From: Mobula hypostoma
Taxonomy: Eukaryota
Length of the DNA: 64,000 nucleotides
Direction of reading: 5' to 3'
Assembly (NCBI RefSeq): GCF_963921235.1
Contig: NC_086101.1
Span: 109,802,001-109,866,000 of the forward strand
The position numbers and the translations under genes were made by a program. Below the pieces are notes generated by a model, which did no database searches, was not told where the DNA came from, and worked only from the letters and a program-made list of their open reading frames with translations. Of the stretch, positions 60,501 through 64,000 are shown one piece after another; the first letter of the stretch is position 1; each line of letters opens with the position of its first letter.

Positions 60501-61274
60501 GCATTAGTCAGAACTGCTGAGACTGTGGCGAGAGTTGGAGGAGTCCAAGAAGAAGCTGTCGTCTGGATTACAGGAGGCTGAAGCAGTCCAGGCCAAGTGC
60601 TCCAGCGTGGAGAGAACAAACCAGCAGCTACCGATCGAGGAAAAGGGGAAGAATACAGATTCGACGGATGGTGAGATGGAGGTGTGGTACATGCTGCCTT
60701 TCGCAAACTTCCCCTTGTTGGATGAAGAGGCTCCTGGCTCTTCTCCCGCTGAGCCAGGTGAGGTGGGGGGGAATAGCTGTGGGCAGCCTGGGTTACTGCA
60801 GGACCCTGAAGGAGAAACAGGGTGCCTGGACACAGGACAGGAGGCTCCGGGTTGTAGTGGGGGCATGAGTGAGAGATTGAGAGAGGATTTGGCAAGGAGA
60901 CCCGAGGTATCCCCAGTAGAGTCCGAGCCTGAAGGGTTTAGGTGAGGGGGTACGGAGGTCTCGGAAGATTAGGAAACTCCCAGATAAGTTGGCCTATGTA
61001 GTGCCTGGGGAACAGGGCATGAGGTCTACTGTTTGGGGAGCAATGTCACTGTTTGTACCTGGATTGGGTTTTTGTGTCTGCAGGAAGGGTTGATGAGTTA
61101 TTTAAAAGTCATGAGGACATGACTAAATTTGGTAGGGGGAGAGTGTTATTTCGGGGTACTGATGTTACACAGGGGACACAACATGCAGCACCCACCCAAA
61201 CAAGAGTGCTAAAGTTTGGCTGGGTAGTGGGCACCACCTCCGAGATCATGCCACTAGATGCAATGAGTCTTACA
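57555..61274 (+). mobile_element. Gypsy LTR retrotransposon 2 (same family), internally deleted
   Basis: 5' LTR 57555-58167; PBS-like TGGGGTTACTTGTCCGGGAT; PNMA-like gag EAYETWAE..LLDDWQCS..LVESL; [12 protein letters not shown]; PPT 61131-61142; partial 3' LTR 61143-61274; TSD CTAG/CTTG. Confidence 0.85.
60100..60640 (+). pseudogene. Captured myosin heavy-chain rod fragments (MYH16-like) inside Gypsy 2
   Basis: [61 protein letters not shown]; EEADGVTVSQIEMAKKH*SELLRLWRELEE; KKKLSSGLQEAEAVQAKCSSVERT. These match recalled sarcomeric MYH S2/LMM motifs. Confidence 0.85.
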
Positions 61275-61390
61275 CTTGATATGCACTTAACACAATGATA
61301 TAATTCAGATGGCACAATATACCAAGTGTTGCAAGACTCCAACTTCACAGGCTGGAGAGAAACTACACAGACTTCCTCTAGATCTCCCGA

Positions 61391-61488
61391 TTATGACAGA
61401 GTCATCACACAGCCGAACAGAACCACCAGTAATAAGGTTAGTATGTAGTGACTGTGAATCAGAGTTGGTTCTGTGCCGCTCCAGGTCT
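61391..61488 (-). CDS. Gene B terminal exon, GPI-signal-like: (E)TWSGTEPTLIHSHYILTLLLVVLFGCVMTLS*
   Basis: Strong acceptor tttttcttctctccaacag|AG; phase 1 matches the V exon donor; small residues SGT, spacer, hydrophobic C-terminus, then TAA with no cytoplasmic tail. Confidence 0.8.
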
Positions 61489-62734
61489 CTGTTGGAGAGA
61501 AGAAAAACTGGATGAAAACTTGGGCACTTTGAATTCTGAGTTCCCCATTTCCACTCTACCCACTTACAGAGAAACGACGCAAAGCATGGCTTTATCTCCT
61601 GGAGAGCACCCCAGTGCCCCCCCCCCAATTAGTCACCACGAATCTTTTGACCCCTCCCACTCTGCTATCTATTCCCCCCCACTCCCCAAACATGTGCTGA
61701 TGTACCGGTCAAACCAGTCCCTGTAAGAACAGAAAAAAATAGGAGCAAGAGTTGGCCAGCTGGCCTACTATTCAATTAGATCATCGACTCCGCTCCACCT
61801 ACCTTCCTCTTCCACATAACTTAATTTAGGCAAAAATCTACCTAACTGTGGCTTAAATATATTTAATGGGGTAGCCTCTACTGATTCCTGCACAAAAGGG
61901 CACAGCCTCAGGATAGAGGGGCGCCCTTTCAAAACAAAGATGTGGAGAAATTTCTTTAGCCAAAGGGTGGCAAATCTGTGGAATTTGTTGCCACATGCAG
62001 CTGTGGTGGCCAGGTTGTTGGGTTTATTTAAGGTGGAGATTGATAGGTTCTTGATTGGACATAGCATCAAAGGTTATGGGGAGAAGGCTTGGAAATGGGG
62101 TTGAGGAGGAGGGGGAGAAAAAGGATCAGCCTTGACTGGAGGCCAGAGCAGACTCGATGGACAAGATGGCCTAATTCTGCTCCTATGTCTTATGGAGAAT
62201 GATCACTATTGCCAATACTACCATCGGGGTGGGGTGGGGGGGAAGAGGTATAACAGCTGGAAGACTCACACACAACATTTTAGAAACAGCTTCTTCTATT
62301 ACACGCGGAAACAGAATTAGGCCATTCAGCCCATTGGGTCTGCTCCAACATTCGATCATGGCTGATTTACTATCCCTCTAAACTTCTGCCTTCATCCCCC
62401 TAATCTTTGACACCCTAATTAATCAAGAAACTACCAACCTCCTCTTTAAATACACCCAATGACTTGATCTCCACTGCTGTCCATGGCAATGAATTCCAGA
62501 TTCACCAGCTTCCGGCTAAAGAAATTCCTCCTCATCTCTGTTGAGAAGAGACATCTTCCCTGTCATCAGATTTCTGAATGGTCGATGAACCCTTAACACC
62601 ACCTGACTATTCCTCTTTCTGCACTAGTTATTTATCTACTTATCTATTTATTTATAATTTTTTTTATTGGAACTCACAGTATTTTTTTGTCTTACACTAC
62701 ACTGCTGCTGCAAAACAACATACTTTCTGACATT

Positions 62735-63285
62735 CATTCTGTGGCCATTTTATTAGGTATTTGCTCATTAATGCAAATGTCTAATTGGCCAATCATGTGG
62801 CAGCAACTCTATGCACAAAAGCATACAAACATGGTCAAGAGGTTCAGTTGTTCAGACCAATCATCAGAATGGGAAAGAAATGTGATCTAAGTGACTTTGG
62901 CTGTGGAATGACTGTTGGTTTCAGACAGGGTGGTTTGAGTGTCTCAGAAACTGCTGACCTCCTGGGATTTTCACACATAGCAGTTCCTAGACTTTACAGA
63001 GGATGGTATGAAAAACACACAGAAGAACAACCAGTGAGCGGCAGTTCTGTGGGGTGAACACGCCTTGTTAATGACAGAGGTCAGAGTAGAATGGTCAGAC
63101 TGATTCAAGCTGACAGGAAGGTGACAGTAACTCAAATAACCACATGTTACAACAGTGTTGTGCAGAAGAGCATCTCTGAATGCACAACACGTTGAACCTT
63201 GAAGTGGATGGGCTCCAGGAGCAGAAGACCACAAACTTAATAAGGTGGCAACAAGAGGCACCTAATAGAGTGGCCACTGAGTGAA
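62735..63285 (+). mobile_element. Tc1-derived non-autonomous element
   Basis: MGKKCDLSDFGCGMTVG..SVSETADLLGF; TIRs GTGGCCATTTTATTAGG and CCTAATAGAGTGGCCACTGAGTG. Confidence 0.85.
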
Positions 63286-63334
63286 TGCCAGTGATCATAA
63301 ACCCGATTCTGAAGAAAAGACTATTCCAAGTTAC

Positions 63335-63661
63335 CTGCAACGATGACATTTGAGACCGCACAGCATTCTTGTTTGGAGGCGGAATCTTTGAAGCAACTTG
63401 TGTAGTTTCCTGCTTGGGAAGTTGTGATGTTTTTTAGCAGCAGAGTAGCATTTCCACTTGCATAGCTGGCCAAAACACCAGGGATCTCTTTTACAGGTGG
63501 CTCCTGGCCAATGCTCATGGTAGTAATCAAGTTTCTGCCTTGCATCCAGGTTAGGTGTAGATTAGATGTAAAACATTTCAGATTGTGGGAAAAGTGGAGG
63601 ATTAGATCTTCCCCTGCCCTTACTGTGACCTCTGTGGAGCTTGCCCAGACATCTCTTTCAC
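63335..63661 (-). CDS. Gene B Ig V-set exon with non-canonical cysteines
   Basis: (G)ERDVWASSTEVTVRAGEDLILHFSHNLKCF..LHLTWMQG..GNATLLLKNITTSQAGNYTSCFKDSASKQECCAVSNVIVA. Acceptor ctttcatccttag|GT, donor GCAG|gtaact; 327 nt, phase 1-1. Confidence 0.85.
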
Positions 63662-63879
63662 CTAAGGATGAAAGGAACACATAACTATACAGCAACATGC
63701 CCATGATGTTGTGCCCACCTTTCAACCTACCTTTAGTTCCTTCCCTCCCAGGTAACCCTCCATTTTCCTCTCATCCATCTGCCCCAAGGTCTCTTGTTGT
63801 TGTTGCTCCTTTCCACGCTTTGTGGCTCATTGGGTGGGACCTTGCTGGTTCTGTAGCATTTTTTGTCTGCTTCTTTTTA

Positions 63880-64000
63880 CCAGGCCAAGTTGCTAGCTTG
63901 GCGCTCAACCCAACACGGTTGGAAAGCGTGTAAGGAGCTGGCCAGATTCGAACGCAGGACCACTCGCCTCAAAGTCCAGTGCAGATGGCACTTTGCCACC
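63880..64000 (-). mobile_element. tRNA-derived SINE fragment
   Basis: Same head and body as the 2204 and 42296 copies; runs to the window edge. Confidence 0.75.

What the first reader, a model, noticed from the sequence alone, without database searches (positions are those of the whole stretch)
61391..63661. GPI-anchored-type single V-set protein with both canonical cysteines displaced
Seen: the B-strand Cys position holds Phe (LILHF) and the F-strand DxGxYxC reads QAGNYTS. Four Cys occur off register (NLKC, YTSC, ECC). The next phase-1 exon encodes SGT, a spacer, a hydrophobic stretch and a stop. Known: V domains without the core disulfide occur in CEACAM N-domains and the CD2/SLAM family, and CD48, CD58, CD160, Thy-1 and several CEACAMs are GPI-anchored. 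Inference: an unusual GPI-linked IgSF ligand or decoy with a rewired disulfide pattern or free thiols for dimerisation.
Basis: partly seen in the sequence, partly recalled or inferred. Interest (0 to 1): 0.8.

Follow-up and report, generated by a model that had tools for sequence, protein, structure and literature searches.

The report
Second Ig domain of ray surface protein
The flagged exon is real and expressed, but it is the membrane-proximal second domain of a two-domain, probably lipid-anchored cell-surface immunoglobulin-family protein found only in sharks and rays; in devil rays it has lost the usual internal disulfide, which is a modest curiosity and not a new kind of molecule.

Summary
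A minus-strand exon (63335-63661) encodes a 108-aa V-type Ig domain with Phe and Ser at the two canonical cysteine positions and four other cysteines. It is spliced exactly as predicted (63335 to 61488) to an exon encoding SGT, an 8-residue spacer, an 18-residue hydrophobic end and a stop. That junction is present in RNA-like contigs of three closely related organisms.

The "single V-set" reading is wrong. The exon is domain 2 of RefSeq LOC134346906 (Mobula hypostoma, 281 aa, uncharacterised). A canonical V domain lies on an exon 15 kb upstream, outside the window, preceded by a leader exon.

Orthologues exist only in four other elasmobranchs: Hypanus, Hemitrygon, Pristis and Heptranchias. All end in the same tail-then-stop build, so a GPI anchor is likely but untested.

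The canonical cysteines are ancestral. The B-strand Cys is kept in the shark, became Phe in stingrays and Mobula, and the F-strand Cys became Ser only in Mobula. Three non-canonical cysteines (C29, C89, C100) are invariant.

The gene evolves fast (dN/dS about 0.7 against Pristis) but stays intact.

Verdict: an uncharacterised, lineage-restricted member of a known kind. Interest is moderate to low.

The parts
63335..63661 (-). Exon encoding domain 2 (D2), 327 nt, phase 1 at both ends. It is a V-type Ig domain of 108 aa with F23 and S88 at the canonical cysteine positions, cysteines at 29, 89, 99 and 100, and N-glycosylation sequons NAT, NIT and NYT.
   Evidence: Sequence and translation. Identical to P0028 residues 142-249. 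RNA-like contigs cover it with 0 mismatches in X5 and X7. AlphaFold model pLDDT 80, pTM 0.73. Foldseek TM 0.75-0.81 to V domains.
61489..63334 (-). Intron of 1846 nt between the D2 exon and the tail exon. It is full of interspersed repeats.
   Evidence: Joint L011 288>2135 'skips 1846', ends CT..AC on the plus strand (GT..AG on the minus strand), in all four runs. Window 63000-63315 matches thousands of copies genome-wide.
61391..61488 (-). Coding part of the last exon: (E)TWSGTEPTLIHSHYILTLLLVVLFGCVMTLS plus stop (TAA at 61393-61391). Candidate omega site S-G-T, 8-residue spacer, 18-residue uncharged hydrophobic C-terminus, no cytoplasmic residues.
   Evidence: Identical to the C-terminus of P0028. 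Same build in four orthologues.
61201..61390 (-). 3' UTR. It is at least 190 nt here and continues at least 47 nt further downstream.
   Evidence: X5 contig record 16 lies on L011 1-288 and runs 47 nt beyond the start of the laid stretch.
63662..64000 (-). The 3' end of the roughly 15-kb intron that separates the D2 exon from the upstream exons of the same gene. Those exons lie OUTSIDE the window. The D1 exon (canonical V-set domain, 342 nt, phase 1/1) is at window-scale 78758-79099, equal to L009:4758-5099. The leader exon (FQVQGVLFYASLAAKVLCLSTLVSE, 76 nt) is at window-scale 80482-80557, equal to L009:6482-6557. The exon carrying the ATG was not located.
   Evidence: Peptides of P0028 located there. 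Sequences with ag/gt borders. Pfam V-set 56 bits over P0028 residues 42-138. Transcript contigs carry 446-448 nt upstream of D2 that do not lie on window 63664-67200.

Best explanation
The flagged exon and its tail exon are the last two coding exons of a four- or five-exon gene, RefSeq LOC134346906 of Mobula hypostoma (281 aa). The gene encodes, in order, a signal peptide, a canonical V domain (D1), a second V-type domain (D2, the finding) and a short stalk with a C-terminal hydrophobic stretch.

The protein is most likely a glycosylated cell-surface molecule held by a GPI anchor. I infer attachment at or near S253 of the conserved WSG motif, with the last 28 or so residues removed. D1 resembles B7/butyrophilin/CAR-type V domains and would present the binding face. 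D2 would act as the membrane-proximal support.

In the stingray/devil-ray lineage, D2 gave up the core B-F disulfide in steps. The B-strand Cys became Phe in the myliobatiform ancestor, and the then-orphaned F-strand Cys became Ser in Mobula. A large/small Phe/Ser pair now fills the core. Three invariant non-canonical cysteines remain: C29 in the B-C loop, C89 on the F strand, and C100 at the start of the G strand. With C99 they could give two alternative disulfides around the B-C and F-G loops.

Shown: exon structure, splicing, expression, orthology, V fold, and the order of cysteine loss.
Inferred: the GPI anchor, the disulfide pairing, and a role as ligand or adhesion molecule.
For: Gene model:
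- P0028 contains the D2 and tail exons letter for letter and lies on a contig of 199,023,498 bp, the length of the window's contig.
- The D1 and leader exons were located with canonical splice sites.
- The Pristis orthologue has the same exon plan, with identical D1 (342 nt) and D2 (327 nt) exon lengths.

Expression and splicing:
- The junction 63335>61488 is present in four runs.
- Contigs extend 446-448 nt 5' of D2. The expected length is 418 nt for leader plus D1, plus a short first exon.

Fold:
- D2 model pLDDT 80, with strands A', B, C, C', D, E, F and G.
- The best Foldseek hits are V domains: sodium-channel beta-4, TCR V-alpha, VL, CLMP, TMIGD2.
- The full model resembles tandem V-V proteins: scFv, JAML, pIgR.

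D1 kinship: BTN2A1 V 40 bits, CD276, CAR, JAML, MOG.

Cysteine history: alignments A2 and A3 combined with taxonomy.

Tail: small residues, 8-residue spacer, 16-18 uncharged residues, then stop. No basic or cytoplasmic residues in any of the five orthologues.

Not decaying: the ORF is intact in five species at dS 0.43, with 27 invariant D2 positions including W38, G84, Y86 and three cysteines.
Against: - No GPI predictor or experiment was available. In Pristis the WSG motif reads WSD-M, and my simple rule finds a different candidate site there.
- A hydrophobic C-terminus could instead serve as a tail-less transmembrane anchor.
- I could not read coordinates of the models, so no Cys-Cys distances back the proposed disulfides.
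- The extracellular cysteine count in Mobula is odd (5 in D1 plus 4 in D2), so at least one cysteine is unpaired or intermolecular. The cysteine pattern is fluid across species.
- dN/dS of 0.6-0.86 shows weak overall constraint.
- The D1-D2 junction itself was not seen directly in reads, because D1 lay outside the laid stretch.
- No ligand, tissue or function is known.
Confidence: 0.6

Rival explanations
1. Same two-domain protein, but anchored as a type I membrane protein whose transmembrane helix ends at the C-terminus, with no GPI remodelling. It might pair with another membrane protein for signalling.
For: The AlphaFold model makes the last 23 residues one helix, 258-280. The hydrophobic run of 18 residues is near the lower limit for a transmembrane span. 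The Pristis motif WSD-M fits the small-residue rule poorly.
Against: There are no basic stop-transfer residues and no cytoplasmic residue in any orthologue. The helix has no charged residue of the kind that recruits DAP12- or FcRgamma-type adaptors. The small-residue motif, 8-10-residue spacer and terminal hydrophobic run match the established GPI-signal build and are conserved from shark to ray.
Confidence: 0.25
2. A single-V-domain GPI protein is also made. It would arise either by skipping the symmetrical (phase 1/1) D1 exon, or from an intronic start at the in-frame MGMLLYSYVFLSSLG just upstream of the D2 exon.
For: Skipping the 342-nt D1 exon keeps the frame. An in-frame, signal-like ORF abuts the D2 acceptor. 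A low-depth contig (3.8 against 728) runs from the exon into that intron in X5, and the main X5 contig breaks at this boundary.
Against: The low-depth contig is what unspliced pre-mRNA or DNA carry-over would give, and it suffices to break the assembly graph. The share of exon-plus-flank words held by RNA-like runs (0.77-0.80) equals the value expected for the exon alone. The intronic 'leader' is the polypyrimidine tract read in frame, and its Pristis counterpart is much less signal-like. None of the annotated isoforms in Hypanus or Heptranchias lacks D1.
Confidence: 0.07
3. The gene is drifting towards loss of function in Mobula. On this reading, the loss of both core cysteines in D2 is early decay of a dispensable gene.
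For: dN/dS is 0.70 overall and 0.86 for D1. The family is small and patchy, with only five species found among 1.8 and 5.8 billion proteins. The few differences among three Mobula-like organisms are mostly non-synonymous: 4 of the 6 listed, one removing a sequon.
Against: The ORF and all splice sites are intact. Contig depth is high in some samples (728 and 654). There are no frameshifts or stops at dS 0.43. The cysteine loss is compensated by Phe/Ser and the cysteine count stays even in D2. The Phe is shared with Hypanus and Hemitrygon, so that state has been maintained since the myliobatiform ancestor. The domain is modelled confidently.
Confidence: 0.08

Closest known systems
CXADR (coxsackievirus and adenovirus receptor) / CTX family (CAR, CLMP, GPA33, ESAM, JAMs)
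   Same: NCBI names the Hypanus and Hemitrygon orthologues 'CXADR homolog'. D1 aligns to CAR D1 (34 bits). D2's best Swiss-Prot model hit is the V domain of Xenopus CLMP. The language-model features of the whole protein are nearest to a two-Ig-domain vertebrate cluster, 'Ventral pancreatic 1', which from memory I take to be CTX/A33-like. Both have two Ig domains and extra cysteines on the A and G strands.
   Different: CTX-family members have V plus C2 domains, a transmembrane segment and a long cytoplasmic tail, and (from my knowledge) Ig domains split between exons. Here the second domain is V-type, each domain sits on one exon, and there is no cytoplasmic tail. BTN2A1 scores higher than CAR for D1 (40 against 34 bits). 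It is not an orthologue.
B7 / butyrophilin / MOG V domains (CD276, BTN2A1, BTN3A, VTCN1, PD-L1)
   Same: These are the best sequence matches of D1 (CD276 E 5.5e-15 summed over its two V domains; BTN2A1 2.3e-9). Part of D2 also matches (CD276, VTCN1, BTN1A1). They are two-domain cell-surface ligands with short or no tails. From memory, VTCN1 has been reported as GPI-linked.
   Different: In B7/BTN proteins the second domain is a C-type Ig domain with its canonical disulfide. Here it is V-type and lacks it. No orthology was shown.
JAML and pIgR (tandem V-type domains)
   Same: These are the nearest natural solved structures to the whole-protein model (JAML 3mj6/3mj7/3mj9 at E about 1e-13; pIgR 5d4k). 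The profile aligns across two pIgR domains.
   Different: TM-scores are low (0.3-0.4). Both are transmembrane with cytoplasmic tails. The CD300/pIgR-type extra disulfide motif is absent from D1 (sequence).
CEACAM N domains and CD2/SLAM-family V domains
   Same: These are V-type domains that fold without the B-F disulfide. The local sequence is similar (HNL...; GNATLLLKNITxxxxGxYT; CEACAM6 E 1e-4). Some members are GPI-anchored.
   Different: In those families the disulfide-less V domain is N-terminal and binds ligand, followed by C2 domains. Here the N-terminal domain is canonical and the disulfide-less one is membrane-proximal. The similarity is confined to the E-F region common to many Ig domains.
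Thy-1
   Same: A V-type domain on one exon followed by a separate exon for a GPI signal. Thy-1 clusters are among the nearest by language-model features (0.95).
   Different: Thy-1 has one domain with its canonical disulfide. No sequence-level homology was tested or found here.

Membership tests
Immunoglobulin V-set domain (Pfam PF07686) | Sequence match above the Pfam gathering score | tested here: inconclusive
   Mobula D2 scores 16 bits against the cut-off of 26. The Hypanus D2 orthologue scores 28.9 bits and passes, Pristis 20.9, Heptranchias 16.6.
Immunoglobulin V-set domain (Pfam PF07686) | Beta-sandwich with A', B, C, C', (C''), D, E, F and G strands, closest to solved V domains | tested here: met
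   AlphaFold model pLDDT 80 with eight strands including C'. The C'' region (residues 51-61) is poorly defined. Foldseek TM 0.73-0.81 to TCR V-alpha, VL and sodium-channel beta-4 V domains, against 0.62-0.72 for I-set domains.
Immunoglobulin V-set domain (Pfam PF07686) | Canonical B-strand Cys / C-strand Trp / F-strand Cys triad | tested here: not met
   F23, W38 and S88 in Mobula. Only the Trp is kept. The triad is present in Heptranchias, and the F-strand Cys is present in all four other species.
GPI-anchored proteins | N-terminal signal peptide | tested here: met
   The P0028 N-terminus MFQVQGVLFYASLAAKVLCLSTLVSE is hydrophobic and modelled as helix 3-25. No dedicated signal-peptide predictor was run.
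GPI-anchored proteins | C-terminal signal: small omega and omega+2 residues, polar spacer of about 6-10 residues, then 15-20 hydrophobic residues ending the protein | tested here: met
   S253-G-T, spacer EPTLIHSH (8), then YILTLLLVVLFGCVMTLS (18), then stop. A like build is present in all orthologues (my own rule-based script; alignments). PredGPI and NetGPI were not available.
GPI-anchored proteins | Actual lipid anchorage (PI-PLC release, anchor mass) | not testable with these tools
   Needs an experiment.
CXADR / CTX family | V + C2 ectodomain, transmembrane segment, long cytoplasmic tail | tested here: not met
   The second domain is V-type. The protein ends with the hydrophobic stretch.
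CEACAM family | N-terminal disulfide-less V-type domain followed by C2-type domains | tested here: not met
   The N-terminal domain has the canonical C52/W65/C118 triad. The disulfide-less domain is the second and last one.
CD2/SLAM family | N-terminal V domain without disulfide plus a membrane-proximal C2 domain with two disulfides | tested here: not met
   The domain order of the disulfide pattern is reversed, and D2 is V-type.

The most novel reading that the evidence does not exclude
This gene family is an elasmobranch-only, fast-evolving GPI-linked V-V co-signalling ligand. It is genetically linked to its receptor: a CTLA-4/PD-1-like V-domain gene about 29 kb downstream on the same strand. 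The fluid cysteine pattern of D2, including the odd extracellular cysteine count in Mobula, would reflect a switch between monomeric and disulfide-linked dimeric forms under pathogen-driven or receptor-driven selection.
Probability: 0.07. Interest if true: 0.6.

Novelty: new member of a known kind. Interest (0 to 1): 0.3.

Why it matters
The finding documents a small IgSF family restricted to sharks and rays that has no name and no literature I could find. Automatic annotation labels it misleadingly as "CXADR homolog".

It also gives a clean natural series for how an Ig V domain gives up its core disulfide. Both cysteines are present in the shark, one is lost in stingrays, and both are lost in devil rays, while three extra cysteines stay fixed. 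That is useful for protein-folding and comparative-immunology questions. It does not overturn anything, because disulfide-less Ig domains and GPI-linked IgSF proteins are well known.

Tried and rejected
- Leader exon just beyond the window. A scan for ATG, hydrophobic run and phase-1 donor between 63.7 and 79.5 kb gave only two poor candidates. The true leader exon is at 80.5 kb, and the ATG lies further upstream and was not found within 70 kb.
- Paralogues. D2 has none in its own genome (next best E 0.05). D1 has only distant V-domain matches.
- Word-indexed protein search with the exon alone found nothing because of its length filter. The exhaustive HMMER search found the orthologues.
- Profile search for more relatives returned only the same five species.
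Only Pristis DNA was obtained.
- Synteny. The SPRY/SOCS-box neighbour seen in Pristis is not within 70 kb upstream in Mobula. The CTLA-4/PD-1-like V exon of Mobula is not within 10 kb downstream in Pristis.
- CD28/CTLA-4 YxxM-type motifs and PD-1 ITIM/ITSM motifs for the neighbouring gene were not found in the window.
- D2 against the neighbour's V exon gave only generic Ig similarity (hhalign probability 86%, 21% identity).
- DUF2103 and Peptidase_C24 Pfam hits are below threshold and were discarded as noise.
- The contig piece at window 65131-65270 (depth 82) lies in repeat-rich sequence and is not part of the RefSeq model, so I did not count it as an exon.
- Cysteine pairing could not be measured, because the model coordinates are not returned.
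Full report
**What is there**

On the minus strand an open exon runs from 63661 to 63335. It follows a pyrimidine-rich acceptor (ccttag) and ends at a gtaac donor, in phase 1 at both ends.

It encodes 108 residues, ERDVWASSTEVTVRAGEDLILHFSHNLKCFTSNLHLTWMQG...GNATLLLKNITTSQAGNYTSCFKDSASKQECCAVSNVIVA. Counting from E1, the B-strand position that normally holds Cys is F23. The conserved Trp is W38. The F-strand position of the DxGxYxC motif is S88. The four cysteines are C29, C89, C99 and C100.

After an intron of 1846 nt, an exon at 61488-61391 continues the frame with (E)TWSGTEPTLIHSHYILTLLLVVLFGCVMTLS and a stop.

**Is it expressed and spliced as predicted?**

Runs X5-X8 (organism A) hold all sampled 31-mers of the exon but only 77-80% of those of exon plus 76 nt of flank. 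That is the fraction expected if they contain the exon without its introns. Runs of two near-identical organisms, B and C, hold 69-75%.

I laid X5, X7, X18 and X25 on window 61201-67200 (L011). All four showed one joint from L011 288 to 2135, which is window 61488 to 63335. It skips 1846 nt with CT..AC ends, that is GT..AG on the minus strand.

The contig in X7 (1010 nt) continues 448 nt upstream of the exon, and that in X18 continues 446 nt. Neither stretch lay on the 3.5 kb of genome upstream that I had included.

The listed differences in organisms B and C within the coding parts are few: T79S, T87A, L127S, L128L, S121C and L132L. None is an indel or a stop. T87A removes the NYT sequon in organism B. 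A few further differences were not listed by the tool, so I cannot state that codons 23 and 88 are identical in B and C.

**What gene is it?**

Pfam alone barely sees the domain (V-set 16 bits, cut-off 26), and the exon has no paralogue in the 3.5-Gb genome.

An exhaustive HMMER search of 1.8 billion representatives found only two strong relatives. P0001 (280 aa) is 73% identical, with the match at residues 141-247. P0002 (359 aa) is 53% identical, with the match at 221-326. A third protein of the same build, P0020, came in at E 3e-4. In all of them the domain is the second one, not the first.

Their sources are Hypanus sabinus ('CXADR homolog'), Pristis pectinata and Heptranchias perlo (both 'uncharacterized').

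Searching with P0001 returned two more proteins: one from Hemitrygon akajei and P0028, 'uncharacterized protein LOC134346906 [Mobula hypostoma]', 281 aa. P0028 lies on a contig of 199,023,498 bp, the length of the window's contig. It contains the D2 exon and the tail exon letter for letter. The window is therefore from Mobula hypostoma, and the finding is part of an already predicted but uncharacterised gene.

**The rest of the gene**

The D1 peptide of P0028 maps to a 342-nt phase-1/1 exon at window-scale 79099-78758 (L009 5099-4758). That is 15 kb upstream and outside the window.

The leader peptide FQVQGVLFYASLAAKVLCLSTLVSE maps to a 76-nt exon at 80557-80482. The ATG must sit on a further exon that I did not find within 70 kb.

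Leader plus D1 is 418 nt, which fits the 446-448 nt that the transcript contigs carry upstream of D2. This is indirect evidence, because D1 was not in the laid stretch.

The Pristis locus (L016) has the same plan, with D1 and D2 exons of the same lengths (342 and 327 nt). This is a two-domain protein.

**What kind of domains?**

D1 is a canonical V-set domain (Pfam 56 bits; C52, W65, C118). Its best solved relatives by profile are the V domains of CD276, BTN2A1 (40 bits, the best single-domain score), BTN3A, JAML, CAR and MOG.

D2 was modelled with its four orthologues and gave pLDDT 80 and pTM 0.73. The strands are A' 8-13, B 19-24, C 34-40, C' 43-50, D 62-67, E 70-75, F 84-91 and G 99-107. 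Its nearest solved structures are V domains (sodium-channel beta-4, TCR V-alpha, VL, CD96; TM 0.73-0.81). Its nearest Swiss-Prot models are likewise V domains (CLMP, TREM1, TMIGD2, CD8 beta, JAML). The Hypanus D2 passes Pfam V-set (28.9 bits). 'V-set' is therefore right.

The whole-protein model is only moderate (pLDDT 66) and resembles tandem V-V proteins: scFv, JAML and pIgR.

F23 lies in the middle of strand B and S88 in strand F, both in confidently modelled blocks. C29 lies in the B-C loop, C89 next to S88 on strand F, and C99/C100 at the start of strand G.

**History of the cysteines**

In the alignment of the five D2 domains, C29, C89 and C100 are invariant.
- The canonical B-strand Cys is present in Heptranchias (a hexanchiform shark). 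In Pristis it sits one position earlier. It is Phe in Hypanus, Hemitrygon and Mobula, all Myliobatiformes.
- The canonical F-strand Cys is present in all species except Mobula, where it is Ser.
- C99 is Cys in Mobula and Pristis and Arg in the other three.

The simplest reading is stepwise loss. The B-strand Cys became Phe in the myliobatiform ancestor, leaving C88 without a partner, as is still seen in the two dasyatid rays. C88 was then replaced by Ser in the Mobula line. The canonical pair is ancestral and its absence is derived.

D2 keeps an even number of cysteines in three of the five species: four in Mobula and Hypanus and six in Pristis, against five in Hemitrygon and Heptranchias. From their positions, pairs such as C29 with C99/C100 (loop to loop, as in some single-domain antibodies) and C89 with C100/C99 (across the F-G hairpin) are plausible. 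I could not measure distances, so this is inference.

The mature Mobula ectodomain has nine cysteines, so at least one is free or intermolecular. The count varies between species, so I draw no conclusion about dimerisation.

**The tail**

All five orthologues end the same way:
- a short stalk with small residues (E-x-W-S-G-A/T-E in the myliobatiforms, STSGAE in the shark, WSDME in Pristis);
- about 8-10 mostly polar residues;
- 13-18 uncharged hydrophobic residues, up to about 22 in the shark if one Glu is tolerated;
- then the stop, with no basic or other cytoplasmic residues.

This is the established build of a GPI attachment signal. Its conservation across sharks and rays argues that it is functional. 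No GPI predictor was available, so anchorage remains a well-founded inference. The rival is a tail-less transmembrane anchor.

**Selection**

Against Pristis, Nei-Gojobori dN/dS is 0.70 overall, with D1 0.86, D2 0.60 and tail 0.62, and dS 0.43. This is fast evolution, as is common for immune-type surface molecules. It is not strong evidence of constraint.

Decay is unlikely, however. The frame and splice sites are intact in five species at this divergence. D2 has 27 invariant positions including the structural W, G, Y and N residues. Contig depth is high in some samples.

**How it most likely works**

The protein is a glycosylated surface molecule with four sequons, three of them on D2. It is tethered by GPI. 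D1 is the exposed binding domain and D2 is a V-type pedestal whose core is held by Phe/Ser packing and whose loops are probably stapled by non-canonical disulfides.

Its partner is unknown. About 29 kb downstream on the same strand lies a V exon (32036-32521) whose nearest Atlas clusters are CTLA-4 and PD-1. That invites the idea of a linked ligand-receptor pair, but nothing tests it.

**Comparison with known families**

The protein works like GPI-linked IgSF ligands such as CD48, CD58 and CEACAMs, and possibly VTCN1. It is a member of none of them.
- CEACAM and CD2/SLAM architectures put the disulfide-less V domain first. That feature was tested and not met.
- CXADR/CTX proteins have a C2 second domain and long tails. 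Not met.
- B7/BTN proteins have a C-type second domain. Not met.

I found no paper on this family.

**Verdict**

The headline, a single V-set protein, is wrong.

This is an annotated but uncharacterised, elasmobranch-restricted member of a known kind. Interest is moderate to low.

Noticed in passing
window 32036-32521 (-): A canonical V exon with a J-like end (GNGTALDVTE) and a 'KDCR' motif. Pfam V-set 39 bits. The nearest Atlas clusters are CTLA-4 (0.97) and PD-1 (0.95). It lies about 29 kb downstream of the finding's gene on the same strand. No YxxM or ITIM/ITSM exon was found in the window, so the family (CD28/CTLA-4 or PD-1) is unresolved.
   Followed up: partly
window 63000-63315 (inside the intron, 20 nt from the D2 donor): A high-copy interspersed repeat with thousands of genomic copies at 81-93% identity. 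An ORF on the plus strand at 62785-63057 looks like a Tc1/mariner transposase remnant (from memory, not tested).
   Followed up: partly
window 63880-64000 (-), continuing to about 64010: A tRNA-like SINE head (ggtggcaaagtgcc...gttcgaatc...) sits about 220 nt upstream of the D2 acceptor in the 15-kb intron.
   Followed up: no
window 63662-63706 (-): The end of the intron, read in the exon's frame, gives MGMLLYSYVFLSSLG directly before ERDVW, which mimics a signal peptide. It is probably the polypyrimidine tract read in frame. The Pristis counterpart reads MVNLCTNNLCIIFCCITG.
   Followed up: yes
G000:C12:109931787-109932095 (+), about 66 kb beyond the window end: Another V-type exon distantly like D1 (32% identity, E 5e-4), so this region holds several IgSF genes.
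   Followed up: no
L016:383-2620 (-), Pristis pectinata: A SPRY plus SOCS-box gene (263 aa, SPSB-like) lies 7 kb upstream of the Pristis orthologue. No counterpart lies within 70 kb upstream in Mobula. The 5' 90 residues of the Pristis model P0002 look like a spurious extension.
   Followed up: partly
window 63401 and 63425 (L011 2201, 2225): In organism B, a close Mobula relative, T87A abolishes the NYT sequon beside the lost canonical cysteine, while T79S keeps the NIT/NIS sequon.
   Followed up: yes
L011:3931-4070 (-), i.e. 1131-1270 nt beyond the window end: A 140-nt contig piece with no mismatches and depth 82 in X5 (13.8 in X7) lies in repeat-rich intron sequence. It could be an expressed repeat or an unannotated exon and is not in the RefSeq protein.
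   Followed up: partly
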